A DNA stretch of 64,000 nt. Source: Euprymna scolopes. Lineage: Eukaryota. The stretch lies in NCBI GenBank assembly GCA_053919585.1, contig JBSSHM010000205.1. One strand, 5' to 3'. Of this stretch, positions 16,147-31,319 are shown piece after piece (position 1 is the stretch's first letter; each line of letters begins with the position of its first letter). The position numbers and the translations under genes were made by a program. The notes beneath the pieces were generated by a model, which was not told the DNA's origin, did not search any database, and was given only the letters and a program-made list of their open reading frames with translations.

Positions 16147-16162
16147 TGTGACGTGGATCACA
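16147..16162. promoter_or_regulatory. CRP-type box
   Basis: TGTGA-CGTGGA-TCACA. Confidence 0.7.
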
Positions 16163-16266
16163 TTTTTATACGTCGCGCACTCTTTATAGCTACCATGGCA
16201 ACTAAAGCGCGAAGCCCATCGCTATCTGACCTGATTTTGTTTTGTCCTCCCTTAACCTTTGATACT

Positions 16267-16309
16267 AGTATAGCCGAACCACCTATAAAAACAAGTGATC
16301 CGGCTCACA
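16267..16309 (-). promoter_or_regulatory. leftward class II CRP-type promoter
   Basis: minus strand TGTGA-GCCGGA-TCACT, 21 bp, TATACT. Confidence 0.7.
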
Positions 16310-16313
16310 GTTC

Positions 16314-16541
16314 CTATACTAAAGTTTTTTCATGTTCCTTTACAAACTTAAGAATCTCCCTATGTTGGTTAGGTGCGGTCTTTCCGATCCAAGTCTTACG
16401 ACTTCCTAGCTTACTAGTAGTACAGATAAAAACCTTACCCGATTTAGTATTAACATCATAGCGTTTTGTACCGTTAACTAGTACCGTAAAATATTCTTTA
16501 TAAAAAGGGTGTTGACTTGTAACCTTTATAGAATGAAACAT
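16314..16541 (-). CDS. hypothetical phage protein
   Basis: 75 aa, downstream of a leftward promoter. Confidence 0.6.
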   Translation of the reverse strand: MFHSIKVTSQHPFYKEYFTVLVNGTKRYDVNTKSGKVFICTTSKLGSRKTWIGKTAPNQHREILKFVKEHEKTLV

Positions 16542-16573
16542 AATACTTACTCTTTGTTTGTGAATGTATGCCC

Positions 16574-16690
16574 ACTATACCTAGGTATATAGCAAGGTGT
16601 TAGGGTGTTAGTATCAAACTGTGACATCTGTCACTAAAAACTATCAAGGTTTAAGTTTCTATTGTACTTAGCATATAAGCCGCGTATATT
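16574..16690. promoter_or_regulatory. divergent promoters sharing a CRP box at 16620-16635
   Basis: TGTGA-CATCTG-TCACT. Leftward TATAGT is 40 bp away. Rightward TTGTAC-N17-TATATT. Confidence 0.6.
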
Positions 16691-16728
16691 TACCTTATCG
16701 AAACAACACAACAAAGAGAGTCATTACC

Positions 16729-17373
16729 ATGTACAACACTAAAAACATGCAAACAACACCACGTACAGCGGCGGGAAATTTTGAGGCTAAATTGTCTCAC
16801 ATTGTATTTAATGACCGTGAGACGGGTTCACTTAAAGCCTTACCAGATCACCACTTAAACCGCGTTACAGGGTACAACCGTAAGCAAGCGGATCTATACT
16901 TCCATAACCCTGATCATTTAGTCGATAATCAGGAACCAGAGTTTAATATATTATCGATCAACTATGTAGAATACGTGGGACTCCGTAAACCTTGTAATGA
17001 TTTACGATACTTTATATTTATGATTGATGCCTTGATCGGTACTGTAGATCGTGAGACAGAGAAACGATACTTAAAACCTTCCTGCGCTTACAACGTATTA
17101 CGTGAGGAGGTAGAAAACCCGAACGGCTCGCACTATAAGAGTTTTAAAAATTGGCTTAAGCTTGTAACTAAAAAGAACGTCTTTAGTATTGATGAAATCG
17201 ATATGTTATTCGATTACATGGATCGTTATTATCAAGCTATGAAACTAGTTCATGAACTACTAACAGGCGGTTTATGGGGTGGTGCTTGGTGTTCATTAGG
17301 CACTATTGAGAACTTGCGATCGCAGCTAAATACTAAAACTAAGGTGTTAGAAGCGGATCCACATAATTATTAA
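16729..17373 (+). CDS. hypothetical protein (island)
   Basis: 214 aa ORF. Confidence 0.75.
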   Translation: MYNTKNMQTTPRTAAGNFEAKLSHIVFNDRETGSLKALPDHHLNRVTGYNRKQADLYFHNPDHLVDNQEPEFNILSINYVEYVGLRKPCNDLRYFIFMIDALIGTVDRETEKRYLKPSCAYNVLREEVENPNGSHYKSFKNWLKLVTKKNVFSIDEIDMLFDYMDRYYQAMKLVHELLTGGLWGGAWCSLGTIENLRSQLNTKTKVLEADPHNY

Positions 17374-17379
17374 CCAAGA

Positions 17380-17421
17380 TGTGACATAGGTCACTGTTAT
17401 TATTTATCAGTGACCTATAAT
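17380..17421 (+). promoter_or_regulatory. class II CRP-type promoter with hairpin
   Basis: TGTGA-CATAGG-TCACT, 20 bp, TATAAT. Confidence 0.8.
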
Positions 17422-17453
17422 TAAAACTCATTCAACAACTAAGAGTACCTGTT

Positions 17454-17711
17454 ATGACAACTAAGTTTCACGCACTACAACTTAACAAAACTTTAGAGAC
17501 AGCGGTTATCAATATCTCATCTCGTAATCATATCGACCTGAATACGGTTACATTTATCGGACGCGGTAACCAACGCCTATTAGTTGGAGAGCCTAAAACA
17601 GGACGTCTAGTACGTTTAAAAGTAGTATCCACGGGTGTTAAAATCGTCGCATCAGTAAATAGTGTAATGGTAGCAACTCGCACGATCAACGGTGTAGATT
17701 TAGAGGGGTAA
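17454..17711 (+). CDS. hypothetical protein (island)
   Basis: follows promoter. Confidence 0.7.
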   Translation: MTTKFHALQLNKTLETAVINISSRNHIDLNTVTFIGRGNQRLLVGEPKTGRLVRLKVVSTGVKIVASVNSVMVATRTINGVDLEG

Positions 17712-17714
17712 GTT

Positions 17715-17954
17715 ATGAGTAAGTTAATATTTGATATAGATTGGGATTCATCGTACGATTTAGATCGGATCGCGGTAAGTGCTAACTCTAATGACACTTT
17801 TATCAATGTAGGGGTTAAGGATTCTACAGTAGATCGCGCCGCATGGATTGAGCTAAACGAAAAGCAACAAATAAAACTAGTCACAGCAATATTAGAAAAC
17901 TTAACTAATAAAGGGGTGATTATCGAACAATGTGAACTAGGTCACGGTAAATAA
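17715..17954 (+). CDS. hypothetical protein (island)
   Basis: GAGGGG SD. Confidence 0.7.
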   Translation: MSKLIFDIDWDSSYDLDRIAVSANSNDTFINVGVKDSTVDRAAWIELNEKQQIKLVTAILENLTNKGVIIEQCELGHGK

Positions 17955-17972
17955 ATCTCAACACCGTATACT
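17931..17972 (+). promoter_or_regulatory. class II CRP-type promoter
   Basis: TGTGA-ACTAGG-TCACG, 20 bp, TATACT. Confidence 0.75.
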
Positions 17973-18011
17973 TAACTTAAATCGAAAACGGCAACAAATA
18001 AGGAAAGCCTA

Positions 18012-18380
18012 ATGACTCCAGAAATGAAAGCAGTACATGAAACATTATTACAACAATGGCAAGATATGCTATCACGCGGCATTATGCCTGTTATTGAACA
18101 GACTATCAAAGGCGACAACGGAGAGACAGAGCATTTAACTGTAGATCTTCTCTTGTTTGTAAAGACTGAAGAACCTAACACAAACCGAGTACCCTATGGG
18201 CTTTACTTTTCCGGTGATTTTGAAAAGGATGTACATTTTAGCGGTGACATACAAAAGCGCGGGGATATGTATTACTTACCTATCGATGAAGTATTTTCGG
18301 ATCTAGATTACTATTTACAAACGGTATCCGAAGAGATCAACGAGGGTTATATTGTACCTAATGGTTTATTTGTGAACTAG
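18012..18380 (+). CDS. acidic hypothetical protein (island)
   Basis: AAGGA SD. Confidence 0.75.
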   Translation: MTPEMKAVHETLLQQWQDMLSRGIMPVIEQTIKGDNGETEHLTVDLLLFVKTEEPNTNRVPYGLYFSGDFEKDVHFSGDIQKRGDMYYLPIDEVFSDLDYYLQTVSEEINEGYIVPNGLFVN

Positions 18381-18431
18381 ATCACACATTACTAAAAAGA
18401 GGTTTGAATATTACTGAGCCTCTTTTATAAT
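18371..18431 (+). promoter_or_regulatory. CRP box with class-I-like spacing and hairpin
   Basis: TGTGA-ACTAGA-TCACA, 39 bp, TATAAT. Stem AAAAGAGG/CCTCTTTT. Confidence 0.7.
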
Positions 18432-18467
18432 GTGAATCGTTAACCAATGACAACCGAGGAAAAGCAG

Positions 18468-18872
18468 ATGTCAAATTATACCGAACTTAAAAACCTTCTT
18501 TCTGAAAAGCTAAACACTTTTGACTTCACACTAGATGATAGCGAACAAAGTTTTAACGTCTACCCTACGTTACATGTAAACCTATTCCATGGTGATTGGG
18601 TAAGTGTTGAAGTTGCTAAAAGCGTTTACGGTAATGTGAAATATAACAACCAGTCAATACTACATGTGAAAGTGTTACTAAATGCTTGTCAAAATTTATC
18701 AGATAATCTATCTGCACATGTATCAATATGTGAAACGGATTGCGACGTGAATCCTTTCAATCTGTCAGTTATCGGGATGTGCGGTATTCATGAAGGGGAT
18801 CAAGAATTACTGCATTTTGCAGATATCCCGACACTAATTGAAGGTATCAAAAATTTTCAATTCGAGTCCTAA
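18468..18872 (+). CDS. acidic hypothetical protein (island)
   Basis: GAGGA SD. Confidence 0.7.
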   Translation: MSNYTELKNLLSEKLNTFDFTLDDSEQSFNVYPTLHVNLFHGDWVSVEVAKSVYGNVKYNNQSILHVKVLLNACQNLSDNLSAHVSICETDCDVNPFNLSVIGMCGIHEGDQELLHFADIPTLIEGIKNFQFES

Positions 18873-18874
18873 AA

Positions 18875-18917
18875 TGTGACGGCGGTCACGGTAATGTATA
18901 AAGTGATCGCCTATAAT
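18875..18917 (+). promoter_or_regulatory. class II CRP-type promoter with hairpin
   Basis: TGTGA-CGGCGG-TCACG, 21 bp, TATAAT. Confidence 0.78.
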
Positions 18918-18962
18918 TATTTCAACTTAAACAGATAGACAACTAAACAAAAGGTAAACATT

Positions 18963-19382
18963 ATGGGCGCAGGTAACCGTTACACTTTAACTGAAGATAG
19001 CAACATTTTAGCTTATCAACTTGACACGTCTTGTAATTGTTGGGAGTCAGAGATCTATGACTGCGATTGTAATGAGAACGACCGCGACGCACTAATCGAT
19101 CACATTATGGAGCTTGATATTTGCAAGCGTTACGGGCTAACAGATAGCCGCGACCAAATTTATTACGGTGAAATGTTCATGGTCACTTTTGAGAGTAGTC
19201 ATAACGGCGATGCAATCGTGATCAATTTTGAATACCAGTCAGATTTTGAGCAATACGGACTACAGGAACATAATTACGAGAAGGCATATAACAAGCTTAT
19301 CCGACACATAAATAAAGCTTTTCCGTTGTTTGTTGGTCACGGGTACACATCAAGCTTTTACGCGGTAAAAGAAATTAAATAA
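18963..19382 (+). CDS. acidic hypothetical protein (island)
   Basis: AAGGT SD, CNC..CDC motif. Confidence 0.75.
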   Translation: MGAGNRYTLTEDSNILAYQLDTSCNCWESEIYDCDCNENDRDALIDHIMELDICKRYGLTDSRDQIYYGEMFMVTFESSHNGDAIVINFEYQSDFEQYGLQEHNYEKAYNKLIRHINKAFPLFVGHGYTSSFYAVKEIK

Positions 19383-19393
19383 CTGTCAAAAAT

Positions 19394-19435
19394 TGTGATA
19401 TAGGTCACAGCAAATAAATATCAGTGACCTATAAT
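19394..19435 (+). promoter_or_regulatory. class II CRP-type promoter with hairpin
   Basis: TGTGA-TATAGG-TCACA, 20 bp, TATAAT. Confidence 0.8.
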
Positions 19436-19472
19436 TAAACCTCATCCAATATCAAGCCTTGGAGGGCTAAAC

Positions 19473-19748
19473 ATGAAAACAACAACTATCACACAACCTA
19501 CACGCAATGCGGCACGTAAACTTAAAGCGGATATGGTAGCGGCGGGAAAAATTGCAACTGTAATCGATAACGGCTCACAGTTCAAAGGGAACGATCGATG
19601 GGGTGTTAAGATTGAAGGGCGCGAAGTCCTAGCGGCACCACGTAAACCACACGGCGGGGTGAAAGTTGAAGTCTGTAATTCATCCCCTCAACATATGCGC
19701 CGCCGCGGTTTTGTAAAGGTGATGCATAAGCGTAACAAGTTGCAATAA
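19473..19748 (+). CDS. basic hypothetical protein (island)
   Basis: GGAGG SD. Confidence 0.75.
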   Translation: MKTTTITQPTRNAARKLKADMVAAGKIATVIDNGSQFKGNDRWGVKIEGREVLAAPRKPHGGVKVEVCNSSPQHMRRRGFVKVMHKRNKLQ

Positions 19749-19791
19749 TGTGAGCTAGGTCACTGTTATTTGTTTATCAGTGACCTATAAT
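19749..19791 (+). promoter_or_regulatory. class II CRP-type promoter with hairpin
   Basis: TGTGA-GCTAGG-TCACT, 21 bp, TATAAT. Confidence 0.8.
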
Positions 19792-19823
19792 TATTTCATC
19801 GAAACAGGAAGCGGAAAATTGCC

Positions 19824-20180
19824 ATGAAAACTTTTAAAACTCTTCTTATCGCGGGACTTTTGGCAACATCTTGTAATGTTAGTGCTATCAAATATATAGC
19901 TAGTACAGACCACGGGATTAAACAGGTAGCAGCGTTAAAAGCTTGTAAGGATTACCTATCTAATGAAGGTAGTTTTGACCTAGCGGATGCATTACAGATC
20001 GCGCTTGTAGATGAATACAATGCAGACCGTAAGAAACACGGATTCTTACAATTCACTCAAACTAAAGTTTATAAGGTAGCGTATCTTAAGAATACAGTAC
20101 TTTTGAAAGATTCAAAACCCTTCCAAGTTAGATGTGAAACAATGGCAAAAGTTGTTTTAAATAAGATTATGAAAATGTGA
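19824..20180 (+). CDS. exported hypothetical protein (island)
   Basis: signal peptide MKTFKTLLIAGLLATSCNVSA. Confidence 0.7.
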   Translation: MKTFKTLLIAGLLATSCNVSAIKYIASTDHGIKQVAALKACKDYLSNEGSFDLADALQIALVDEYNADRKKHGFLQFTQTKVYKVAYLKNTVLLKDSKPFQVRCETMAKVVLNKIMKM

Positions 20181-20217
20181 TCTAGGTCACAGCAAATAAA
20201 TCCCAACAACGTATACT
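20176..20217 (+). promoter_or_regulatory. class II CRP-type promoter
   Basis: TGTGA-TCTAGG-TCACA, 20 bp, TATACT. Confidence 0.8.
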
Positions 20218-20257
20218 TAACTTAAATCGAAACGGCACAACATAAGGAAGCCCTCCC

Positions 20258-21046
20258 ATGAAACTACGTAAAACTGATAAGCAATCTGATTCAAAAGTTA
20301 TCTTGGAAGTCGGTTATATGTCTAATAATACAGAACTAACCACTACAATCAAATACATGAAATTTGAAGGTGAAGTGGTATATTGTAGCGTTAAACGAAA
20401 AGAACTGCTATCCCGTATCTGTCCCGATCTTGCTTCGCTTGAAAAAATGTATAGTGTTAACCCTAAGACAGGCGCTAATTGGTCTGACAATAGTTTAGGG
20501 CATTATATCGAACAAACTAGAAAATATTTAGGCAAGAATCCTAAAACTATCGAGGATTTTCAGGATGAGATCTCAGAATTGGCTAACGAGTTAAACACTC
20601 ATAAGGTTTTATCTTTTGGGGGTGATAACTTACCCGTCTACGCGATTGAAAAGCTACGCGACATCCTAAAAAATCCGATGGATCACGACTCAGAACGTGT
20701 AAGAAACTATCTCGAAAAAGTTACTGATAAAGTGGTGAACAACTCTTTCCGCCGTGACAGACTTAAAAAACAGGGTAATGATTTTTGTGACAGACTAGCA
20801 ACCTTGCGAGTGTTGAAGAAAATGGTTCAACACCCTTTACTAAATAACATTCCGTCACGATCTGAAGTGTGGACTATCGATCGACTATCGGACTGGGTAG
20901 GTTGTGATCGATCTCTTCTTATGCCTCTATTCTTCCTTAACAAGGAAGAGTTGGAAGAACAGATCGCGGCACTACTTCAGGGTGTACAATCTGCACGTCT
21001 AAAAGAGTTGAAGCGTTTAGAAAAGAAATTTAATCTTAAGCTGTAA
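20258..21046 (+). CDS. hypothetical protein (island)
   Basis: 262 aa, AAGGA SD. Confidence 0.75.
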   Translation: MKLRKTDKQSDSKVILEVGYMSNNTELTTTIKYMKFEGEVVYCSVKRKELLSRICPDLASLEKMYSVNPKTGANWSDNSLGHYIEQTRKYLGKNPKTIEDFQDEISELANELNTHKVLSFGGDNLPVYAIEKLRDILKNPMDHDSERVRNYLEKVTDKVVNNSFRRDRLKKQGNDFCDRLATLRVLKKMVQHPLLNNIPSRSEVWTIDRLSDWVGCDRSLLMPLFFLNKEELEEQIAALLQGVQSARLKELKRLEKKFNLKL

Positions 21047-21048: not shown

Positions 21049-21091
21049 CGTGAGATAGGTCACGGTATTGTTTCGCGCCGTGACCTATACT
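21049..21091 (+). promoter_or_regulatory. class II CRP-type promoter with hairpin
   Basis: CGTGA-GATAGG-TCACG, 21 bp, TATACT. Confidence 0.75.
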
Positions 21092-21225: not shown

Positions 21226-21750
21226 ATGAACAACTACAACACAGCAACTAAGACAACTATCAAAGCAATCCGCGAACTACTTGAAGACACCTTTTCAAAT
21301 ATCGACGTAGCATCATATGAAACACAGATCGATTTGTTCCGTGCTGTACTTAAGTTTGAAGCTGAACACGGACTAGATACTACAAAAGAATGTCTTAGTA
21401 TTCTTGATGTAGCTATGTCAGCTACTGATACGGATTTAGATGATCTTTACTGTGAGTTCTCCGAAAAACTAGAAGCTATCGAATCCCGTGAAGACGACGA
21501 AAATCTTGAGCTTCCTTGTGGTGACGTGCGAATCATCGACAAAGAAGAGATTGATCAGATCTGGACTGATAGCCTTATCGAAATGATTAAAGACTGCTAC
21601 AACCTAGGCGATAACCTTCCTTCTTTTGTTGAGATTGACTGGGAAAAGACTGCTGAAAACTGTAAGGTGGATGGAATGGGGCATCATTTCGCATCATACG
21701 ACCATGAGGAGCATGAAACGGATAGTGTTTACATTTTCCGCACTAACTAA
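21226..21750 (+). CDS. highly acidic protein, possible ArdA-like DNA mimic
   Basis: D/E-rich, C-terminal EIDWEKTA...YIFR reminiscent of ArdA. Confidence 0.5.
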   Translation: MNNYNTATKTTIKAIRELLEDTFSNIDVASYETQIDLFRAVLKFEAEHGLDTTKECLSILDVAMSATDTDLDDLYCEFSEKLEAIESREDDENLELPCGDVRIIDKEEIDQIWTDSLIEMIKDCYNLGDNLPSFVEIDWEKTAENCKVDGMGHHFASYDHEEHETDSVYIFRTN

Positions 21751-22237: not shown

Positions 22238-22267
22238 AAAAGCGCACCATTAACGGGTGCGCTTTTT
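22238..22267. terminator. bidirectional intrinsic terminator
   Basis: AAAAGCGCACC..GGTGCGCTTTTT between convergent genes. Confidence 0.75.
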
Positions 22268-22660
22268 GTATATATCGGGGTTGAAATTGTAGTAGTTCCC
22301 TACTAGTTCGGATCCTGTAACATCTAACCACACAACACGGTTTACCCTATTAGGCTGGATAACCTTATACTTATTACTATCAAATTTCCCTTCTTGTTTT
22401 ACGCGGGTACGCTTGATCAGTTTCACCTTTTCGAGTTTAGTTAAAGACCTGTATAAGGTGCGCTCGGATATAGCTAAATGCTTGGATACTTGATCAACGT
22501 TCGGGTAAATAGAATTATAACCATGAATCACACCTAAACCGTTCAAATAGCCGTATAAGAGTTTATCTACACTGGATAGAGGGATTGTACTAGCTTTATC
22601 CTTAAACCTTATAGCGGCTATTCTGTGAAGCTCTAAAGGCATATTGAAATATAATGACAC
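22250..22660 (-). CDS. winged-HTH protein (HTH_36 / replication-initiator N-terminus-like)
   Basis: DKLLYGYL..YPNVDQVSKHLAISERTLYRSLTKLEKVKLI..NKY. Confidence 0.7.
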   Translation of the reverse strand: MSLYFNMPLELHRIAAIRFKDKASTIPLSSVDKLLYGYLNGLGVIHGYNSIYPNVDQVSKHLAISERTLYRSLTKLEKVKLIKRTRVKQEGKFDSNKYKVIQPNRVNRVVWLDVTGSELVGNYYNFNPDIYKKRTR

Positions 22661-22713
22661 GGGAGTTCCTCCTTAAATTTCTTTATGAATTAATTATAAC
22701 ATGGTGCTTGAAC

Positions 22714-22755
22714 TGTGATCTATATCACGGTAATATGTTTGGGACGTCCTATAAT
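22714..22755 (+). promoter_or_regulatory. class II CRP-type promoter
   Basis: TGTGA-TCTATA-TCACG, 20 bp, TATAAT. Confidence 0.78.
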
Positions 22756-22796
22756 GGACACATCAATTAAGAACAACACATTTTAAGGAGTTACCC

Positions 22797-22910
22797 ATGG
22801 TTAAGTTTATTTTTATCTTAGTTTGTACATTTGGTCTTTACTATACATCGGCAGATGTGGTGGCACCTTCCTGTCAGGGTGTAGAATGTTCTTCACTTCT
22901 TAAGGACTAG
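22797..22910 (+). CDS. 37-aa exported or membrane mini-protein with CxxxxC
   Basis: AAGGAG SD, MVKFIFILVCTFGLYY...CQGVEC. Confidence 0.6.
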   Translation: MVKFIFILVCTFGLYYTSADVVAPSCQGVECSSLLKD

Positions 22911-22915
22911 GCGCG

Positions 22916-23251
22916 GTGATAAAGCATCAAATCGACTTGCTTATGATTCATAAAATTGTCGATAAAAGCACCGGACATATTACGGAGCTAAAACCTAATG
23001 ACAAGGTAGTTTATAGTTATTTACTAGCTTACCAAGGAGAAGGTTTAACCGTAAACCGGATCGCACTTGATAACGGATTGAGTGATAGTACTATAAAGCG
23101 TACTATAAAAACCTTGAAGAGTTGCGGACTATTGACAACTGAATCCACAAAACACAAAGGGCGTACGGTAACACAGTTTAATCCGAAAACCCCTACTATT
23201 AACAATTTTAAATATTACCAGATTAACGGTAATGAGTTATTCATCAATTAA
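22916..23251 (+). CDS. winged-HTH protein, paralog of 22250-22660
   Basis: DKVVYSYL..VNRIALDNGLSDSTIKRTIKTLKSCGLL. Confidence 0.7.
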   Translation: MIKHQIDLLMIHKIVDKSTGHITELKPNDKVVYSYLLAYQGEGLTVNRIALDNGLSDSTIKRTIKTLKSCGLLTTESTKHKGRTVTQFNPKTPTINNFKYYQINGNELFIN

Positions 23252-23426: not shown

Positions 23427-23468
23427 TGTGACATAGGTCACTGTTATTATCTGACGGTGACCTATAAT
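23427..23468 (+). promoter_or_regulatory. class II CRP-type promoter with hairpin
   Basis: TGTGA-CATAGG-TCACT, 20 bp, TATAAT. Confidence 0.8.
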
Positions 23469-23508
23469 TAAACCTCATTCACGCAAACCATTTGACGGAA
23501 ATTTTATC

Positions 23509-23787
23509 ATGCGTACTAATAAATTTATTACCCTAGTTTGTTTTGACAAGAATAATTTTGATAAGTTTGAGGTTGTGCCAGTGGCAAACCTACACGGCAA
23601 GGATGTCGAGGCGTTCGCTAACACTCTTCACGATCACGGGCTTAAATGTTTCACAACATCTACAGATAAGGGTACGCAAAAGTATTTTTCACCTCACATC
23701 AAAACAGGGAATAAATTGGTTGAAAAATTTATTCAACATTGTACACTTAGAGGGGTAGAAATTAATAATCTTTTTTGGAGTATGTAA
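23509..23787 (+). CDS. hypothetical protein (island)
   Basis: follows promoter. Confidence 0.7.
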   Translation: MRTNKFITLVCFDKNNFDKFEVVPVANLHGKDVEAFANTLHDHGLKCFTTSTDKGTQKYFSPHIKTGNKLVEKFIQHCTLRGVEINNLFWSM

Positions 23788-24515: not shown

Positions 24516-24558
24516 TGTGAACCCGATCACGGTTTTATGTGGTCGGGTTTAGTATTAT
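24516..24558 (+). promoter_or_regulatory. class II CRP-type promoter with hairpin
   Basis: TGTGA-ACCCGA-TCACG, 21 bp, TATTAT. Confidence 0.75.
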
Positions 24559-24611: not shown

Positions 24612-24797
24612 ATGCTTACAATCTTATCCCTTATCCTTTCTGGCGGTGAAGTGGTTACAATTACGCAACCGGATTTAGAGACTTGCCTAAACTCACAAGA
24701 AAAGGCGATTCTTGCAGGGCATAAGGCAACATGTGACTTAATCACTCCGGAGCAATGGGATCAACAATTACAGCAACTTATCAACAAGCAATCTTAA
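24612..24797 (+). CDS. small hypothetical protein (island)
   Basis: GGAG SD. Confidence 0.6.
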   Translation: MLTILSLILSGGEVVTITQPDLETCLNSQEKAILAGHKATCDLITPEQWDQQLQQLINKQS

Positions 24798-25050: not shown

Positions 25051-25093
25051 TGTGACTTACCTCACAGCAATCTGATCGGGGTTAATCTATTAT
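25051..25093 (+). promoter_or_regulatory. class II CRP-type promoter
   Basis: TGTGA-CTTACC-TCACA, 21 bp, TATTAT. Confidence 0.78.
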
Positions 25094-25145: not shown

Positions 25146-25757
25146 ATGGATAACATCACTAAATCACTTTTTAACCTAACATCTACAAATAACGGTTTTT
25201 TCAAGTCTGAAAAGCAAGCGGACTTCCTAAAGTCTTACACGGTAGACGGTTCAACAATTTGGGGATCGAGTTCATCAACTTACGGTAATGTAACACAGCA
25301 AGTATTCTTTTTAGATTCTGAAGGCGTTACAGCGGTTAAAACGTGGTCACAGAAAAAGCAATCATTTACCCGCACCACTTGGGAACGTAAGACCGATGCA
25401 GCCTTTGCAGCCCTTAAAGTTGCAAAAGCCGTAGCCGATGAGAAGAAATCTGTTTTACGTACTAGACTTGATAAAATTCACAACCGAGTAAATGAATTAC
25501 GTAACCTTAAGGATAAAACTTTAGCTAAACTGTCTATGACACTCGTAACAGAGTTTTTAGAAGCAACTGAAGGGAAGTCTAAAGAAGAGGTTAAAAAGCT
25601 TTCCAAGCCCTTTATGGAGCGTAATAACAAGGTCAAAAAGCTTAGTGATAATGTTGAGCCGCAAATTCGACGCCTGTTTGATAAATCGTATGAATTAGAG
25701 CGCGAATTATGCAACGTTACCTCAGAATTTCGCAAACTGTACGCAAACACTAAATAA
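25146..25757 (+). CDS. hypothetical protein with coiled-coil C-terminus (island)
   Basis: AGGAG SD. Confidence 0.75.
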   Translation: MDNITKSLFNLTSTNNGFFKSEKQADFLKSYTVDGSTIWGSSSSTYGNVTQQVFFLDSEGVTAVKTWSQKKQSFTRTTWERKTDAAFAALKVAKAVADEKKSVLRTRLDKIHNRVNELRNLKDKTLAKLSMTLVTEFLEATEGKSKEEVKKLSKPFMERNNKVKKLSDNVEPQIRRLFDKSYELERELCNVTSEFRKLYANTK

Positions 25758-25807: not shown

Positions 25808-25850
25808 TGTGACTTTTGTCACAGCATTTTAAAACTAGATAACCTATTAT
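25808..25850 (+). promoter_or_regulatory. class II CRP-type promoter
   Basis: TGTGA-CTTTTG-TCACA, 21 bp, TATTAT. Confidence 0.78.
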
Positions 25851-25914: not shown

Positions 25915-26292
25915 ATGTTTTTATCTGAATTCAACTCATACCTAGTAACATGTGGCGAGGGAAACGATTTACGTACTTTGAAAGTAAGTGGTGAAGATTT
26001 GAAGACCGTTTTTGCAACATTTCCCCGTGTAGTGTGTATTGAAGAAATTCATACTTTTGAAATCTACGTTAAAAATCAGGAAGGTGTACGTGGATGGGAT
26101 ATCAAGTTTATTCAAAGCACTGATAAACTTATCAAGACTTTCCCGCTATTTGATTGTATTATCAGTAAGAACGATCACATTCCGGCGGATCTATCAGAAC
26201 ACCTAACCTATGAAGGGGCGGACTATCCTCACGGAGGAGTTTTCCTACCTAATACCGAAAAAAGCGAAAATGGGAAATTCTACTTATCGTAA
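25915..26292 (+). CDS. hypothetical protein (island)
   Basis: GAGGG SD, ATG at 25915. Confidence 0.7.
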   Translation: MFLSEFNSYLVTCGEGNDLRTLKVSGEDLKTVFATFPRVVCIEEIHTFEIYVKNQEGVRGWDIKFIQSTDKLIKTFPLFDCIISKNDHIPADLSEHLTYEGADYPHGGVFLPNTEKSENGKFYLS

Positions 26293-26517: not shown

Positions 26518-26560
26518 TGTGACTTACATCACAGCACTTTAAAACCTAATCGCTTACTAT
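26518..26560 (+). promoter_or_regulatory. class II CRP-type promoter
   Basis: TGTGA-CTTACA-TCACA, 21 bp, TACTAT. Confidence 0.78.
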
Positions 26561-26619: not shown

Positions 26620-27060
26620 ATGTCTACTGAATACACACTTACATTTGATAACTGTTTTATTGACGCTTTTGATGTACCATACCGTGCACATCCTATCTTT
26701 TCTGATCTGTCTGCTTTTGTTAAGACCTTGCCGGAAAATCTAAAAGATCTAGTTTCGTTTGTAGATGAATATCAACTTGAAGGTGCCGATCTTGATGTGG
26801 TACTAACTCTGGAGGCGGAACAAATTTCCGTAATGTGGGAAGCTTTTCAAGAAGGTACGATCGCAAAGTTTAAAGATAATGGCTATGTAGCTAGTCACTA
26901 TTACAAGGGTTATATAGTGGAGTTGGATAAGGCACACGGTAAAGTGTTTATTTTATCAAAAGGAAAGGATGTGAGAGTTTCAACCGCGGCAACTGGAGAA
27001 CTGGACAGTTTAGAAGGGGCGAAAAAGTTTATCGACTGGGCAGAGACTTTTAATTCATAG
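26620..27060 (+). CDS. hypothetical protein (island)
   Basis: GGAG SD, ATG at 26620. Confidence 0.72.
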   Translation: MSTEYTLTFDNCFIDAFDVPYRAHPIFSDLSAFVKTLPENLKDLVSFVDEYQLEGADLDVVLTLEAEQISVMWEAFQEGTIAKFKDNGYVASHYYKGYIVELDKAHGKVFILSKGKDVRVSTAATGELDSLEGAKKFIDWAETFNS

Positions 27061-27103
27061 TGTGATCTAGGTCACTGTTATTATCTTAATAGTGACCTAT
27101 AAT
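27061..27103 (+). promoter_or_regulatory. class II CRP-type promoter with hairpin
   Basis: TGTGA-TCTAGG-TCACT, 21 bp, TATAAT. Confidence 0.8.
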
Positions 27104-27140
27104 TAAACCTCATTAAACAACACGGCAATAAAAGCACGTT

Positions 27141-27527
27141 ATGAAAATCCTAGTTAAAATCCTAAAAGTTGAAGACAATACAGTTACTTATCAAGAACTT
27201 AACCGCACAACCAAGGCTGTTATGATTGAAGATTTTATGTCAATTGAACAGTTCATCAATGCACTTAACCATGAAACTTTTGGATTCGAGTTGGCAGAAA
27301 TGAACAAACAGCAAGCTATCAAAACCGCGGCAATGTTCGGAGCGGTGATCACAAACTGGGATTACTGCCGCGTACTTCAAAACTTTTCAGCTACTGTAAA
27401 CACTAAGCATGAATACGATAACGGTTATGGTTACATGAAAAACGAAATCTCAATCACAACATACTCGCAAGCCCACCTATGCCGTATGGCTATCGTTGAA
27501 CACCACACTTACAAGGGAGATAAATAA
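27141..27527 (+). CDS. hypothetical protein (island)
   Basis: follows promoter. Confidence 0.7.
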   Translation: MKILVKILKVEDNTVTYQELNRTTKAVMIEDFMSIEQFINALNHETFGFELAEMNKQQAIKTAAMFGAVITNWDYCRVLQNFSATVNTKHEYDNGYGYMKNEISITTYSQAHLCRMAIVEHHTYKGDK

Positions 27528-27528
27528 T

Positions 27529-27795
27529 ATGTACCTTATTATTGATTCAACTGTCACAATTATGGAAACAGGACGTCGTACGGTAAGCACTTGGTTGATC
27601 GTCGCCACTGGTAACGGGTGCGGTGGATGGGATTTTCATGAGCATCAGACGGGACGCCCATTCTTTTATCAAAAAGATGAACTAAACGCAGTAAATGGTA
27701 TGTTATCCCGTCTACAGTTCCCAAATGTATCGGTTACCGAAACTACTAACGGCAATCATCGACAAATCAATACAAAAACCGTCACACTACTATAA
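27529..27795 (+). CDS. hypothetical protein (island)
   Basis: GGGAG SD, ATG at 27529. Confidence 0.65.
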   Translation: MYLIIDSTVTIMETGRRTVSTWLIVATGNGCGGWDFHEHQTGRPFFYQKDELNAVNGMLSRLQFPNVSVTETTNGNHRQINTKTVTLL

Positions 27796-27806
27796 AGAGG
27801 ATTACC

Positions 27807-28112
27807 ATGCGAACAGGTATTAAGGGCGTTAACAACCTAGGTAATAAAATAATTTACCGTTCTAAATCTGCTATAGCAGGGGGCGGGGGTGTGAGACTTG
27901 TCAAGGTGTACGGAGTAGGCGAACAGCTAGCCCAGATTCTTATTGAACGCCACTTAACCATACACCGTGAGGGTGAAGCACACATCACTGATAATGGAGG
28001 CTCGATCTCCGTCGTGATAGTATCAAAAAGTCGTGAGATCTATATAGACTATATCCCTGAAAAAGGGCGATTGCTAATATTCACTGACTTTGAGCCGGAT
28101 CCTGATAAATAG
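27807..28112 (+). CDS. hypothetical protein (island)
   Basis: GAGGA SD. Confidence 0.7.
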   Translation: MRTGIKGVNNLGNKIIYRSKSAIAGGGGVRLVKVYGVGEQLAQILIERHLTIHREGEAHITDNGGSISVVIVSKSREIYIDYIPEKGRLLIFTDFEPDPDK

Positions 28113-28155
28113 TGACCTACTTCACAGAATACCCCGTCCAGTACGGGGCTATTTC
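28111..28155 (+). terminator. CRP-type box followed by a terminator hairpin
   Basis: AGTGA-CCTACT-TCACA, then CCCCGT..ACGGGG. Confidence 0.6.
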
Positions 28156-28256
28156 TTACCGTTTTACCGTACACCATTTAAACGCTCTGTAAGGCTCTGT
28201 ACGGGGTTTTTGTACTTAATGCGGGTGTTTATACCTCTTTTGTGATTTGACGGTTT

Positions 28257-28299
28257 TGTGACCTAGGTCACTGTTTTTATAATCTAGGAAGGTTACTAT
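28257..28299 (+). promoter_or_regulatory. class II CRP-type promoter
   Basis: TGTGA-CCTAGG-TCACT, 21 bp, TACTAT. Confidence 0.75.
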
Positions 28300-28346
28300 A
28301 TAGACCTAGACACAAAACACCTAAACAACCTTTTTGGAGAAACACC

Positions 28347-28586
28347 GTGAACGCACAACAAATTATCAAAACCCTAGCGGCTAACAATATTGCATCGGCT
28401 ACAGTAGCACCTAAAACAGTAGGGATCACAGTTGGCGATTGGGTAGCCGTGATTGTACAACCTACCGCCGCGGGGATCGAAGTCTCTTTAGTAGCTCAAA
28501 AGACTTTAACACCTGTACAAACTGAATACGGTAATAAGTACAATTTTGTGAGACTTGTCACAGAACTTTTAGAGCAAGTACAGTAA
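28347..28586 (+). CDS. hypothetical protein (island)
   Basis: GGAG SD plus GTG. Confidence 0.7.
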   Translation: MNAQQIIKTLAANNIASATVAPKTVGITVGDWVAVIVQPTAAGIEVSLVAQKTLTPVQTEYGNKYNFVRLVTELLEQVQ

Positions 28587-28589
28587 TAT
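28547..28589 (+). promoter_or_regulatory. class II CRP-type promoter embedded in the 3' end of a CDS
   Basis: TGTGA-GACTTG-TCACA, 21 bp, TAATAT. Confidence 0.68.
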
Positions 28590-28643
28590 TAAGTCTCTGG
28601 CGGGGGTAACCCGCCTATAACCACACCAATTTGGAGATACCCC

Positions 28644-29012
28644 ATGTTATTATCAGAGTCTCGCATTACAGCCACAAATGAAATCAATATCAACATCTGG
28701 GGGTCTCGCATGTTCCGTGCAAGCTTCCCAAAACAAATCACTTTCGATGGCAATATTGAATCAGAATCTAATAGTGTAATGGTGGCACTTTCTTACACTG
28801 GCAAGGATGGGGTTTTGTATGGTTCATCTATCAAAGGTCACATTGTAGGCAACACGATCCGACTAGGCGCAAAAGGTGTTAAAGGTCAGGTAACTAGCAA
28901 CTATGACGGCGAACCCCTAGAGCTAGTAGTTTTAGACCGTCAAGGCAAGGTTATCCACCGTCAACCGTTCGGTAAAGCGGCAAAGGTTAAAGACCACGGT
29001 CATACTAAGTAA
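28644..29012 (+). CDS. hypothetical protein (island)
   Basis: GGAG SD. Confidence 0.7.
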   Translation: MLLSESRITATNEININIWGSRMFRASFPKQITFDGNIESESNSVMVALSYTGKDGVLYGSSIKGHIVGNTIRLGAKGVKGQVTSNYDGEPLELVVLDRQGKVIHRQPFGKAAKVKDHGHTK

Positions 29013-29013
29013 A

Positions 29014-29056
29014 TGTGACATACATCACAGAACGCCCCGCCTAGTGCGGGGTTTTT
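29014..29056 (+). terminator. CRP-type box followed by an intrinsic terminator
   Basis: TGTGA-CATACA-TCACA, then CCCCGC..GCGGGG-TTTTT. Confidence 0.7.
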
Positions 29057-29063
29057 CATGTTA

Positions 29064-29106
29064 TGTGAGTTTGATCACAGTATTACTTATCCAGACCACC
29101 TATTAT
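29064..29106 (+). promoter_or_regulatory. class II CRP-type promoter
   Basis: TGTGA-GTTTGA-TCACA, 21 bp, TATTAT. Confidence 0.78.
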
Positions 29107-29165
29107 TAACTTGTACCGAGAAGGTATAAAGCAAATTTTTCAACACCCCATTTGGAGTCTACATT

Positions 29166-29366
29166 ATGACACGTAAAGAAGCTAAACAAGCTATTCAATC
29201 TGAACTAAACGCTATCCACGGCAGCCCACTAGTAAACATGATCACATCAGAACATGATTACCTTATCGGCGGTGTTAAGACTGGACAACTTACAGCAAAA
29301 GAGGCGGCAAATAAGATCATGGCTGCATATACTTCAGAATGTACTAAACTGTTTAACGCTCGATAG
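29166..29366 (+). CDS. hypothetical protein (island)
   Basis: GGAG SD. Confidence 0.68.
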   Translation: MTRKEAKQAIQSELNAIHGSPLVNMITSEHDYLIGGVKTGQLTAKEAANKIMAAYTSECTKLFNAR

Positions 29367-29379
29367 GAGGACATCCCCC

Positions 29380-29646
29380 ATGAAAATGATTAACACTGAC
29401 AACTGTAAAGCATTCACAACCGAACTACTTAAAGTTAGCCGCGGTACTCATCCCGACTACTACGGAGATCGCCTATACAACCGCGACGCTGTACTGACAA
29501 AGTTAGCAATAGAACAACCGAAAAAGGCGCTTGATTTCGCCCTTGAAATTCAGACCCTAGACCCTGACACCCTAGGGGTGCACCCTAACACCCTGAAGAT
29601 GTGGGCTAACACATTGACCCGACAAGTACAACTCAACATCAAGTAA
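29380..29646 (+). CDS. hypothetical protein (island)
   Basis: AGGAGG SD, ATG at 29380. Confidence 0.7.
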   Translation: MKMINTDNCKAFTTELLKVSRGTHPDYYGDRLYNRDAVLTKLAIEQPKKALDFALEIQTLDPDTLGVHPNTLKMWANTLTRQVQLNIK

Positions 29647-29647
29647 A

Positions 29648-29693
29648 TGTGACCTACATCCCACAAGCCCCGTATATCACGGGGTTATTTTTT
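29648..29693 (+). terminator. degenerate CRP box plus intrinsic terminator ending the island
   Basis: TGTGA-CCTACA-TCCCA, then CCCCGT..ACGGGG-TTATTTTTT. Confidence 0.65.
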
Positions 29694-31319
29694 GCCCTTT
29701 TACAGAACAGCATACTGTAAATATTCGTCTATACCGTACACCATTTAAACGCCCTGTAAGCCTCCCTACTGCACTTTTACCCCTCACTCAACCTCGTAAT
29801 CGATTATTCATGTAACGCCCCAAATCGCATTTATTACACCAAAACGTGACCTATATCACCTAAATTTCCCTACCAAAACCTATCCCATATTACCGTGACA
29901 TAAATCACAATTCTCATACATTACATATACTTAGCGAGATTTTACCATAGGGGTCAAAATGGCATACGGTAAGTTCTCCCTATACCCTCGGAAGCCTTAC
30001 ACTGTAAGGCGTACGGTAAAATATGGACAGGGGTCAATATGTCATACTATAAATATATACACGCGGCATAATATACTAGTTTAGTTAATTCTCATTAGTC
30101 GGGATAGGAGGGGAGCGGGACGGTTACCGTATAGGTGCGGGTATTGATAATTGACGGGGATAATTTTATACGGGAGAGGATGCGGTAAGCAGGGGGAGTG
30201 GGGAGTGAGCTGGAGAGAAAATGTGGGGAGTGGAACGAGGCGGGGACATTTGCTTAACAACTCGCTCTCTCTTCCATCGGTTACACATCCGTTATAATAT
30301 ACAGTACTATATAGTGAATAATAATTACATCAACTATACACCTTACAGAACACGCACAAACAGAACAGCGTACTGATTACATCAACACAGCATACGGTAT
30401 AGAATAAGCAACACACTATACTGTAAACCACAACAATATTACAGTACGCCATACATGCATTATCTATCAGGTGATGCTATCTTGTATGTATTATGTGACT
30501 TGAATCACCCCAGTCATACGGAGCGCCCGAGCTATACAGAACGCGGTTCCCTTCACAGATATTTTGAAATTTCAGAACGCTTTACAACATGCCATCCCGA
30601 CTTGTTAAGCAACGATCGGGCTACTTTAACTCCCACACCATTTCCCACGTTCCCCACCAGATATTTCACCCCACAGATATTTCAAACCTCACCACCACAA
30701 ACAGTACCCCCACAAAATTTAAGTACCCCAATTAAAAACTACCCACCACACCCTTTATTCACCACAATGACTAACCACTGCATAATAAAATACCCACAAA
30801 ATACCTATTCCACAGAAAAAATTAAATACCCCACCACACACGCTCCCACAACCCCCAGAATTAACATTATGAAGTACACCGATACAATGGCTCCACCTCC
30901 ACCAACAACCCACCACAGGGCTTCTCAGGAGATATTTTGACTATAGGGATATTTGGATGTCAGGATATTTTGGACAGGTAGGATTAAAAAGGGAGGTACC
31001 AATTTGAAAAAGATATAGGGAAAGTATTGATAGGATGGAAATTTTTGGACGTATACTTTGTCTGGAGGATGTGTCGCGCTTAGATATGGTAAGGGTTAGT
31101 TATAGGATATTTTAGGAAAGTAATGTTTGAATAGAGGATCAGGTTGGAATGGGTATAAAAAGAAGAGTTTTGAGTATGGTGTAGATAAATGTCGTTTAAT
31201 ATACGTTTAATAAGGGGTGTAAATGGGCGTAGGAGGGATTTTAAGGGAAAAGTGGATACATTGTACCCATAAATAGAAAAACCTCCCTGTGAGCTTTACA
31301 GAGAGGCTTAGAGTGGGTG
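29694..31319. other. 1.6-kb non-coding, strand-skewed, repeat-rich region where transcription converges (candidate genome terminus or origin)
   Basis: no credible ORF, alternating G-rich and C/A-rich blocks, seven GATATTT copies, three more CRP-like boxes. Confidence 0.6.

What the first reader, a model, noticed from the sequence alone, without database searches (positions are those of the whole stretch)
16147..30509. A 14-kb phage gene island driven almost entirely by CRP-box promoters (candidate cAMP-CRP-gated infection program)
Seen: 27 matches to TGTGA-N6-TCACA with at most two mismatches, at 16147, 16294, 16620, 17380, 17931, 18371, 18875, 19394, 19749, 20176, 21049, 22714, 23427, 24516, 25051, 25808, 26518, 27061, 28111, 28257, 28547, 29014, 29064, 29648, 29845, 29894 and 30494. 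Eighteen sit exactly 20-21 bp before a TAnnnT -10 with no good -35, and two sit 39-40 bp before one. The N6 spacer varies while the half-sites are conserved. The flanking arms use plain TTGACA-N17 promoters, and I noticed no such boxes there. Known: this is the CRP consensus, and these spacings match class II (about -41.5) and class I (about -61.5) CRP activation. Inference: a lytic phage places a whole block of about 35 orphan genes under the host carbon-starvation sensor, so the block fires according to host cAMP status.
Basis: partly seen in the sequence, partly recalled or inferred. Interest (0 to 1): 0.92.

Follow-up and report, generated by a model that had tools for sequence, protein, structure and literature searches.

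The report
CRP-box promoters drive phage gene island
A 14-kb block of small orphan genes in a Vibrio-type phage is transcribed from promoters that swap the usual -35 element for a near-perfect binding site of the host's cAMP receptor protein, and unrelated Vibrio phages use the same design.

Summary
TGTGA-N6-TCACA with at most one mismatch occurs 26 times in the window against 2.7 expected, and 25 of these lie in 16147-30509. Seventeen boxes sit exactly 20-21 nt before a TAnnnT -10, with no -35 and no extended -10. That puts the box centre at about -40.5/-41.5, followed by a 26-58 nt leader, an SD and an ORF.

The flanking arms use ordinary TTGACA-N16-18 promoters instead. Every + strand intergenic gap of at least 66 nt in the island carries a box.

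The same architecture occurs in:
- the syntenic island of Vibrio phage RYC;
- a closer metagenomic relative (L265);
- an unrelated lineage of 40-kb Vibrio siphoviruses (jenny 12G5).

Vibrio phage 193E37-1, a more distant relative, uses -35/-10 promoters in the same island.

No CRP-family protein, and no other protein shared by all box-bearing phages, is encoded by any of them. The variable positions of the box do not co-vary as an RNA stem would.

Best reading (about 0.7): these are class II, and a few class I-like, promoters that depend on host cAMP-CRP. Real gating by cAMP is inferred, not shown. Ten of the 27 boxes are not simple + strand promoters: three abut terminators, one drives a leftward transcript, and several are unassigned.

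This is a new variant of a known kind. The closest precedent is NtcA sites in cyanophages.

The parts
16147..30509 (+). Island of about 32-36 small + strand ORFs, mostly orphans, punctuated by 27 CRP-type boxes.
   Evidence: 96 of 133 window ORFs have no homolog in RYC or 193E37-1. Every + strand gap of at least 66 nt carries a box.
17380..17421 (+). Class II-type promoter: box 17380-17395, gap 20, -10 TATAAT 17416-17421; drives ORF 17454-17711.
   Evidence: cassette family 1
17931..17972 (+). Class II-type promoter: box, gap 20, TATACT; drives ORF 18012-18380 (RYC ortholog is also box-driven).
18371..18431 (+). Class I-like promoter: perfect box 18371-18386, -35-like TTGAAT 18404-18409, 16 nt, TATAAT 18426-18431 (gap 39); drives ORF 18447-18872.
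   Evidence: the same arrangement recurs in RYC
18875..18917 (+). Class II-type promoter (gap 21, TATAAT); drives ORF 18963-19382.
19394..19435 (+). Class II-type promoter (perfect box, gap 20, TATAAT); drives ORF 19473-19748.
19749..19791 (+). Class II-type promoter (gap 21, TATAAT); drives ORF 19824-20180.
20176..20217 (+). Class II-type promoter (perfect box, gap 20, TATACT); drives ORF 20258-21046.
21049..21091 (+). Class II-type promoter (2-mismatch box, gap 21, TATACT); drives ORF 21226-21750 after a long leader of about 128 nt.
   Evidence: the RYC ortholog is box-driven
22714..22755 (+). Class II-type promoter (gap 20, TATAAT); drives the 37-aa ORF 22797-22910 and the winged-helix gene 22916-23251.
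23427..23468 (+). Class II-type promoter (gap 20, TATAAT); drives ORF 23509-23787.
24516..24558 (+). Class II-type promoter (gap 21, TATTAT); drives ORF 24612-24797 (start uncertain).
25051..25093 (+). Class II-type promoter (perfect box, gap 21, TATTAT); drives ORF 25146-25757.
25808..25850 (+). Class II-type promoter (perfect box, gap 21, TATTAT); drives the ORF ending at 26292.
26518..26560 (+). Class II-type promoter (perfect box, gap 21, TACTAT); drives ORF 26620-27060.
27061..27103 (+). Class II-type promoter (gap 21, TATAAT); drives ORF 27141-27527.
28257..28299 (+). Class II-type promoter (gap 21, TACTAT); drives ORF 28347-28586.
28547..28589 (+). Class II-type promoter (perfect box, gap 21, TAATAT); drives ORF 28644-29012.
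29064..29106 (+). Class II-type promoter (perfect box, gap 21, TATTAT); drives ORF 29166-29366. A second box lies 50 bp upstream at 29014.
16267..16309 (-). Leftward class II-type promoter: box 16294-16309 read on the - strand, 21 nt, TATACT at 16272-16267. Conserved in four Vibrio phages.
16140..16312 (-). Conserved non-coding element of about 170 nt between boxes 16147 and 16294. Candidate small RNA or leader; function unknown.
   Evidence: 85% identical in L265 against about 72% for the flanking genes. No conserved ORF, no covarying structure, no Rfam family.
16620..16635 (+). Box upstream of ORF 16729-17373. Possible class I-like arrangement (weak -10 about 38 nt downstream); unassigned.
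   Evidence: The L265 ortholog has a class II box promoter instead.
28111..28148 (+). Box followed after 5 nt by a G+C hairpin and T-run (terminator-like); not a promoter.
29014..29052 (+). Perfect box followed after 4 nt by a terminator-like hairpin. It lies 50 bp upstream of the box of the 29064 promoter (possible tandem site).
29648..29686 (+). Box followed by a terminator-like hairpin.
29845..29909 (+). Two boxes 49 bp apart (29845 with 2 mismatches, 29894 with 1) and no -10 at 20/21; unassigned.
30494..30509 (+). One-mismatch box inside ORF 30455-30940; unassigned, possibly chance.
22250..22660 (-). The only - strand gene inside the island: winged-helix protein (HTH_36, E 1e-5) with its own - strand terminator at 22266-22238.
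22916..23251 (+). Winged-helix protein (HTH_36 2e-8, DUF6945 4e-7), downstream of the 22714 box promoter.

Best explanation
The island is transcribed by host sigma-70 RNA polymerase from activator-dependent promoters. In these promoters a near-consensus site for the host cAMP receptor protein (CRP) replaces the -35 element.

The inferred mechanism is:
1. A CRP dimer binds TGTGA-N6-TCACA centred about 41 bp upstream of the start site (class II geometry).
2. It recruits polymerase to a good -10 hexamer.
3. In one or two cases the box sits about 20 bp further upstream of a promoter that keeps a -35-like hexamer (class I-like geometry).

Shown here: the motif, its clustering, its fixed distance to the -10, the lack of -35 and extended -10 elements, the downstream SD and ORFs, its recurrence in related and unrelated Vibrio phages, and the absence of a phage CRP homolog.

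Inferred: that CRP is the binding protein, where the start sites lie, and that expression follows cAMP. The likely consequence is that this accessory block is expressed only in cells with active cAMP-CRP, while the arms with -35/-10 promoters do not need it.
For: 1. Motif and clustering: 26 hits with at most 1 mismatch against 2.7 expected, 25 of them in the island, 11 perfect.

2. Geometry: 17 of 27 boxes have a -10 at a gap of 20/21 against about 1 expected. The predicted box centre is -40.5/-41.5, and leaders of 26-58 nt lead to an SD and ORF. PMC6050953 and PMC10328515 state that CRP activates from -41.5 or -61.5 and that Vibrio CRP uses this consensus.

3. No -35: the island has no TTGACA-like promoter, whereas the arms have 11 intergenic ones. 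No TG lies before the -10.

4. Selection rather than copying: only 10 boxes belong to two duplicated cassettes. The other 17 have unrelated flanks (median 35% identity) yet keep the core.

5. Comparative evidence:
- RYC has 19 of its 27 boxes, and all 6 perfect ones, in the syntenic 13-kb island.
- L265 has the same promoters.
- Orthologous genes are box-driven in all three.
- 193E37-1 uses TTGACA-17-TATAAT in the same island.

6. Unrelated lineages share the design:
- Vibrio siphovirus jenny 12G5 has 14 boxes against 1.3 expected, 8 in class II geometry. One box is shared by its divergent early promoters.
- Further contig groups show it as well.

7. No phage factor:
- No Crp/cNMP family among the 133 window ORFs.
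- E. coli CRP finds nothing in the window, RYC, 193E37-1 or any locus, and no Vibrio phage among 50,697 records.
- No protein is common to the window, RYC and jenny.

8. A G right after the box (-33, the third position of a -35 hexamer) recurs in unrelated groups. This fits sigma-70 still touching that DNA.
Against: - There is no expression, start-site or binding data. Everything rests on sequence.
- The host of this contig is unknown and is inferred to be Vibrio from relatives at 50-78% identity.
- The boxes carry information that the host ChIP sites I read do not show: T8/A9 at the dyad, and C at position 6 rather than T.
- Ten of the 27 boxes do not fit a simple + strand class II promoter. 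Three of them sit directly before terminators.
- Only 64 kb of the genome is visible, so a factor encoded elsewhere cannot be excluded for this phage.
- One contig group with the same architecture (L207) has tail genes most like Firmicute phages. There the binding protein would have to be another Crp/Fnr-family regulator.
Confidence: 0.7

Rival explanations
1. A phage-encoded dimeric DNA-binding activator, not of the CRP family, recognises the box and activates these promoters from about -41. This would resemble the logic of known phage middle or late activators that bind a dyad overlapping the -35 region. The island would then be a delayed class timed by the phage, and the likeness to CRP sites would be mimicry.
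For: - Two winged-helix proteins are encoded inside the island, next to a box (22250-22660 on the - strand, 22916-23251 on the + strand).
- RYC also has a DUF6945 winged-helix gene at the edge of its island, next to a box.
- Extra conserved positions (T8, A9) are not seen in the host CRP ChIP sites I read.
- Only 64 kb of the genome is visible.
Against: - The window's winged-helix proteins have no detectable homolog in RYC.
- The RYC DUF6945 gene has a clear homolog at the same place in box-poor 193E37-1 (E 1e-14), so it does not track the boxes.
- No protein is shared by the window, RYC and jenny 12G5.
- At least two unrelated Vibrio phage lineages would need to have evolved or acquired a factor with exactly CRP's site and both of CRP's activation geometries.
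Confidence: 0.15
2. The boxes act mainly as something other than activator sites. They could be high-affinity decoys that soak up host CRP. They could also be short homology cassettes that let small genes be shuffled between phages, like the promoter/stem-loop cassettes of T4-type hyperplastic regions. Promoter activity would be secondary.
For: - 25 or more near-consensus sites per genome copy is far more than the few perfect sites seen among V. cholerae ChIP targets in the part of the table I read.
- Two cassette families of five near-identical promoters lie between unrelated orphan genes.
- Box-plus-terminator modules exist.
- Related phages carry different genes behind similar cassettes.
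- PMC2839356 describes such cassettes in T4-type phages.
Against: - The fixed distance of 20-21 nt to a -10 and the absence of a -35 are promoter constraints that a decoy or a recombination role does not require.
- 17 boxes have unrelated flanks, so they are not merely copies.
- These roles do not exclude the main explanation.
Confidence: 0.08
3. The palindromes are RNA hairpins (processing, stability or termination signals) at the 3' ends of the upstream genes.
For: - The box often starts 0-10 nt after a stop codon.
- It can fold into a short hairpin, with a mean of -4.7 kcal/mol for the 22-mers.
- The terminator scan picks up some boxes as weak stems.
Against: - The variable position pairs 1-16, 6-11 and 7-10 pair no more often than in shuffles (16/27, 10/27, 12/27).
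- The half-sites are conserved as sequence, not as complementarity.
- The stems are weak, and real terminators follow some boxes separately.
- The fixed distance to the -10 is unexplained by this model.
Confidence: 0.02

Closest known systems
Class II (and class I) CRP-dependent promoters of Enterobacteria and Vibrio
   Same: The 16-bp core is the same. The site centre is near -41.5 and replaces the -35, or lies about 20 bp further upstream of a promoter that keeps a -35. A sigma-70 type -10 is present.
   Different: The setting is a phage, as a dense array (about 1.7 boxes per kb) driving orphan genes. The sites are much closer to consensus than most chromosomal ChIP targets I read. The dyad centre (T8, A9) shows extra conservation, and position 6 prefers C.
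NtcA-site promoters of marine cyanomyoviruses (PMC3037559)
   Same: Lytic phages carry multiple sites for a host global nutrient-status regulator upstream of diverse phage genes. NtcA belongs to the CRP family (my knowledge). The authors propose that the phages exploit a host stress response.
   Different: The regulator and motif differ (GTA-N8-TAC as given in that paper). Those sites number 1-16 per genome and are scattered. Here 25 sites are concentrated in one 14-kb island as its only promoter type.
Promoter/stem-loop cassettes (PeSL) of T4-type hyperplastic regions (PMC2839356)
   Same: Blocks of small orphan genes each carry their own short, repeated regulatory cassette. Gene content turns over between relatives while the cassettes persist.
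   Different: Going by that paper's name for the cassettes (promoter-early stem-loop; I saw only its title and the start of its abstract), they carry ordinary early promoters. Here the -35 is replaced by a dyad activator site, and stem-loops accompany only three boxes.
Phage-encoded activators of -35-less middle or late promoters (the Mu Mor/C type is what I had in mind; PMC4461284 on Mu C turned up)
   Same: A dyad site overlaps the -35 region of promoters that lack a -35, giving a separately controlled gene class.
   Different: No phage-encoded binding protein that co-occurs with the boxes was found. The site is the host CRP consensus.

Membership tests
Class II CRP-dependent promoter | Site matching TGTGA-N6-TCACA | tested here: met
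   11 perfect and 14 one-mismatch boxes; 26 hits against 2.7 expected.
Class II CRP-dependent promoter | Site centred about 41.5 bp upstream of the transcript start | tested here: inconclusive
   The distance to the predicted -10 fits for 17 of 27 boxes (gap 20/21, centre -40.5/-41.5 if the start lies 7 nt after the -10). Start sites were not measured.
Class II CRP-dependent promoter | Weak or absent -35 element, so activity depends on the activator | tested here: met
   No TTGACA-like hexamer at 16-18 nt and no TG extension in the island promoters. The arms have 11 canonical ones.
Class II CRP-dependent promoter | Host encodes CRP with this specificity | tested here: inconclusive
   The host of the contig is unknown. 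The nearest phages infect Vibrio, whose CRP uses this consensus.
Class II CRP-dependent promoter | Transcription requires cAMP-CRP | not testable with these tools
   Needs expression or binding data.
Class I CRP-dependent promoter | Site near -61.5 upstream of a promoter with its own -35 | tested here: inconclusive
   Box 18371 has a gap of 39 to TATAAT, with TTGAAT-16 between. The centre would be about -59.5 to -61.5, depending on the start site. RYC has several like it.
Phage-encoded activator system (dyad site at a -35-less promoter) | A phage DNA-binding protein that co-occurs with the sites | tested here: not met
   No CRP homolog. The winged-helix genes do not track the boxes. No protein is shared by the box-bearing lineages. 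Limited to the 64 kb visible here.
T4-type PeSL cassettes | Repeated promoter cassettes between small orphan genes in a plastic region | tested here: met
   Two cassette families of 5. 96 of 133 ORFs are orphans relative to RYC and 193E37-1.
T4-type PeSL cassettes | Ordinary sigma-70 early promoter plus stem-loop | tested here: not met
   There is no -35. A stem-loop follows only 3 boxes.
Structured RNA / hairpin element | Pairing kept by compensatory change | tested here: not met
   Variable pairs are no better than shuffles. No Rfam hit.

The most novel reading that the evidence does not exclude
The boxes are not, or not only, read by host CRP as a nutrient gate. One possibility is that an unrecognised phage protein mimics CRP's specificity and geometry. 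The other is that the array of 25 or more near-consensus sites, multiplied by genome replication, titrates CRP away from the host regulon while island genes are expressed. Either way, a CRP-box regulatory currency would be shared by unrelated Vibrio phages.
Probability: 0.15. Interest if true: 0.8.

Novelty: new variant of a known kind. Interest (0 to 1): 0.62.

Why it matters
If host cAMP-CRP drives these promoters, a large virulent-type Vibrio phage ties a whole accessory gene block to the host's carbon-status regulator. About 30 orphan genes are involved, probably host-takeover or anti-defence functions.

Unrelated Vibrio phages do the same, down to their main divergent early promoters (jenny 12G5). 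That would make phage gene expression, and perhaps infection outcome, depend on nutrient state in marine vibrios. It would parallel NtcA use by cyanophages.

It also gives a simple sequence rule (box, 20-21 nt, -10) for annotating promoters in Vibrio phage genomes, where most intergenic signals are unannotated. I found no description of this in the papers searched.

Tried and rejected
1. RNA hairpin or processing signal: rejected. No covariation and no Rfam or tRNA hits.

2. Phage-encoded CRP homolog: rejected.
- Pfam on all 133 window ORFs found no Crp/cNMP family.
- E. coli CRP (fetched as L263:8121-8753 through NC_000913.3) finds nothing in the window, RYC, 193E37-1 or any fetched locus.
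- It finds only 21 of 50,697 phage records, which look mostly like bacterial contigs or unannotated fragments, and none is a Vibrio phage.

3. Island winged-helix proteins as the binding protein. I first dismissed this because RYC lacks homologs. I reopened it when RYC's lone - strand island gene turned out to carry DUF6945. I rejected it again because that gene is conserved in box-poor 193E37-1, and the window's proteins are not significantly similar to it.

4. 'All copies of one cassette': rejected. Only 10 of 27 boxes cluster.

5. Attempts that led nowhere:
- Megablast to phages found nothing.
- The YfaP-based scan of viral contigs gave only relatives at 30-35% identity.
- The cassette-string scan gave six single hits.
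- Exact-protein look-ups of two window proteins were not on record.
- The pf16 paper's promoter motifs are unrelated.

6. Not done: I did not build a position weight matrix from the ChIP table of PMC6050953, because that would have meant typing many site sequences into a script. I compared by eye with the parts of the table shown.

The only CRP consensus used is the finding's own pattern, which the two Vibrio papers confirm.

Full report
**What the window is.** The 64-kb window is part of a large tailed phage.
- Gene content: an A1-like DNA transfer protein, PIN-PhoH, ribonucleotide reductase (the small subunit fused to glutaredoxin), ATP-dependent ligase, a Clp-like protease, thymidylate synthase, DHFR, a Dam-type methylase and a short serine recombinase.
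- There are no tRNAs and no Rfam families.
- No deposited phage matches at nucleotide level.
- By protein, the nearest relatives are Vibrio myoviruses: RYC (31 of 133 predicted proteins shared) and 193E37-1 (13 shared). 96 ORFs are orphans relative to both.
- A closer relative exists as a 32-kb ENA metagenome contig (L265; 67% identity in the 690-aa DUF8224/YfaP-like protein, 70-78% nucleotide identity in shared genes).
- The layout is a + strand arm (1-16 kb), the + strand island (16-31 kb) and a - strand arm (31-64 kb). It is syntenic with RYC and 193E37-1.

- With at most one mismatch the pattern occurs 26 times against 2.73 +/- 1.72 expected. 25 of these lie in 16147-30509.
- The two-mismatch class is mostly background.
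- A positional profile of the 27 listed boxes gives A-rich positions just upstream, then invariant G2, T3, G4, A5, T12, C13 and C15.
- Three further positions are conserved: T8 in 23/27, A9 in 18/27, and a G immediately after the box in 20/27.

**Promoter geometry.**
- Seventeen boxes have a strong TAnnnT hexamer exactly 20 (6 boxes) or 21 (11 boxes) nt after the box. The chance rate is 0.02 per position, so about one is expected.
- If the start lies 7 nt after the -10, the box centre is at -40.5 or -41.5.
- Each promoter is followed after 26-58 nt by an SD-like sequence and an ORF. Two are exceptions: 21049 has a leader of about 128 nt, and the ORF start after 24516 is ambiguous.
- None has a -35-like hexamer at 16-18 nt or a TG extension.
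- The arms carry 11 intergenic TTGACA-N16-18 promoters.
- Every + strand intergenic gap of at least 66 nt in the island holds a box, usually starting 0-10 nt after the upstream stop codon.
- Box 18371 sits 39 nt before TATAAT, with TTGAAT-16 in between. This is class I-like, and RYC has several of the same build.

**Boxes that are not simple + strand promoters.**
- Three boxes (28111, 29014, 29648) are followed within 4-5 nt by a G+C hairpin and a T-run.
- 29014 lies 50 bp upstream of the 29064 promoter box, and 29845 and 29894 are 49 bp apart. These could be tandem sites, which I did not test.
- Box 16294, read on the - strand, is followed after 21 nt by TATACT, so it is a leftward promoter.
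- 16147, 16620, 29845, 29894 and 30494 remain unassigned.

**DNA site or RNA stem?**
- The variable position pairs 1-16, 6-11 and 7-10 pair in 16, 10 and 12 of 27 boxes. That is no more than in shuffles.
- The stems are weak.
- The half-sites are conserved as sequence, which indicates a protein-binding dyad.

**Copies or selection?** Clustering the 55 nt downstream of each box gives two cassette families of five. The other 17 boxes have unrelated flanks (median identity 35%) but keep the core, and mostly T8/A9 and G17 as well.

**Relatives.**
- In the complete RYC genome, 19 of 27 boxes with at most one mismatch, and all six perfect ones, lie in the syntenic 13-kb island, which is 8% of the genome. 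Both the class II and class I-like arrangements occur there.
- L265 shows the same promoters and cassette types.
- The four island genes shared by the window and RYC are box-driven in both phages. The L265 ortholog of ORF 16729-17373 also has a box promoter, although of the class II rather than the class I-like build.
- 193E37-1 uses TTGACA-17-TATAAT promoters in its island. It has only two perfect boxes in the whole genome, both in that island.
- So within one phage family, the box and the -35 hexamer are alternative solutions at the same place.

**Unrelated phages.** I scanned the viral contig collection for box, 20/21 nt, TATAAT. This returned several mutually unrelated groups with 5-7 boxes, nearly all in the same geometry.
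- Group A consists of known 40-kb Vibrio siphoviruses (jenny 12G5, 1.236.O, 1.198.A/B; 94-97% identity in DnaB).
- In the complete jenny 12G5 genome there are 14 boxes (9 perfect) against 1.3 expected, 8 of them in class II geometry.
- One box between its divergent early operons serves a -10 on each side. Only a symmetric dimer can do that.
- Groups B and C are distant relatives of A. Group E has a family-B polymerase nearest to large Vibrio phages at 40% identity. Group D has a tape measure protein nearest to Firmicute phages.
- A G right after the box recurs in these groups. At a gap of 21 it is position -33, the third position of a -35 hexamer, which fits sigma-70 still contacting that DNA.

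**Who binds?** The Vibrio papers state that Vibrio CRP uses TGTGA-N6-TCACA and that -41.5 and -61.5 are its activating positions. I tested the alternative of a phage factor in four ways.
1. Pfam on all 133 window ORFs gave no Crp/cNMP family.
2. E. coli CRP finds nothing in the window, RYC, 193E37-1 or any fetched locus. Among 50,697 phage records it matches 21, which look mostly like bacterial contigs or fragments, and none is a Vibrio phage.
3. The two winged-helix genes in the island have no RYC homolog. RYC's DUF6945 gene has a homolog at the same place in box-poor 193E37-1.
4. No protein is common to the window, RYC and jenny 12G5.

A host factor shared by vibrios is the economical explanation. 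I put it at about 0.7.

**What argues for caution.**
- There are no expression or binding data, and the host of this contig is unknown.
- Only half of the genome or less is visible.
- The boxes prefer C at position 6 and TA at the dyad. The V. cholerae ChIP sites I read prefer T at position 6 and show no central preference.
- Ten of the 27 boxes are not simple promoters.
- Sites this close to consensus may be occupied at low cAMP-CRP levels, so 'carbon-starvation gating' is a hypothesis and not a result.

**Comparison with known systems.** The mechanism proposed is the textbook class II/class I CRP mechanism. What is new is the setting and the scale.
- The closest described analogue is the set of NtcA sites in cyanomyoviruses: 1-16 per genome, proposed to exploit the host nitrogen-stress response (PMC3037559).
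- The architecture of small orphan genes, each with a repeated regulatory cassette, resembles the PeSL cassettes of T4-type phages (PMC2839356).
- My literature searches found no description of CRP-box promoter arrays in phages. The library does not hold most subscription-journal papers.

Noticed in passing
window 16140-16312 (also L265 15500-15676, L267 1462-1638, L268 1493-1669): A non-coding element of about 170 nt bounded by two boxes is conserved in four Vibrio phages. It is 85% identical in L265, against about 72% for the neighbouring genes. A conserved leftward class II-type box promoter points into it. It has no conserved ORF, no covarying structure and no Rfam family. Its 5' part is purine-rich. 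It may be a small RNA or a leader.
   Followed up: partly
window 22250-23251: Two winged-helix genes lie in divergent orientation around a box-bearing intergenic region. Between them is a 37-aa hydrophobic ORF (22797-22910). The - strand gene is the only one of that orientation in the island and has its own terminator. Its homologs occur in Vibrio phages 1.193.O, S4-7, 184E37 and VnaP, but not in RYC.
   Followed up: partly
window 28111-28148, 29014-29052, 29648-29686: Three boxes are followed within 4-5 nt by terminator-like hairpins instead of a -10. Their role is unclear: an upstream tandem site, a roadblock or a cassette remnant.
   Followed up: no
window 17380-17425, 19394-19440, 19749-19795, 23427-23472, 27061-27107: In cassette family 1, the 3' half of the box (TAGGTCAC) is repeated in inverted form (GTGACCTA) directly abutting the -10. 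This gives an 8-9 bp inverted repeat with a loop of about 15 nt inside the promoter. L265 has the same feature.
   Followed up: no
L134, L080, L078; L092, L125, L103, L058; L040; L082: Many nucleotide-unrelated viral contigs carry arrays of perfect TGTGA-N6-TCACA palindromes in other contexts. Some sit 5-25 nt before the RBS with no -10. Others lie next to TTATCCACA-type repeats. One set forms tandem 18-bp iterons, and one array is in a G+C-rich contig. These are probably different uses of the same dyad.
   Followed up: partly
L264 (Vibrio phage jenny 12G5) 2754, 5711, 6805, 8451, 18547, 22631: In jenny 12G5, perfect boxes also lie in the structural-gene half of the genome, not only in the early region.
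   Followed up: no
window 6129-7277: This 382-aa protein had no Pfam hit in my scan. Its L265 counterpart (386 aa, same position, about 73% nucleotide identity) carries a precomputed hit to Pfam Gad2 (PF26128). The window protein is therefore a possible anti-defence protein.
   Followed up: no
window 14534-15328: A short (264 aa) serine recombinase-like gene (Resolvase plus Recombinase domains) is conserved at the same place in 193E37-1 and L265. It is too short for a typical large serine integrase.
   Followed up: no
window 45116-46084, 50247-51641, 53234-54601: Three auxiliary genes stand out: a solute-receptor-like protein (NMT1_3; RYC annotates a TRAP receptor-like protein), a PIN-PhoH fusion, and an RNR small subunit fused to glutaredoxin.
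   Followed up: no
L002 390-1265 (RYC, - strand): RYC annotates a 291-aa 'anti-sigma factor' just upstream of its + strand arm. It has no Pfam hit and no homolog in the window.
   Followed up: partly
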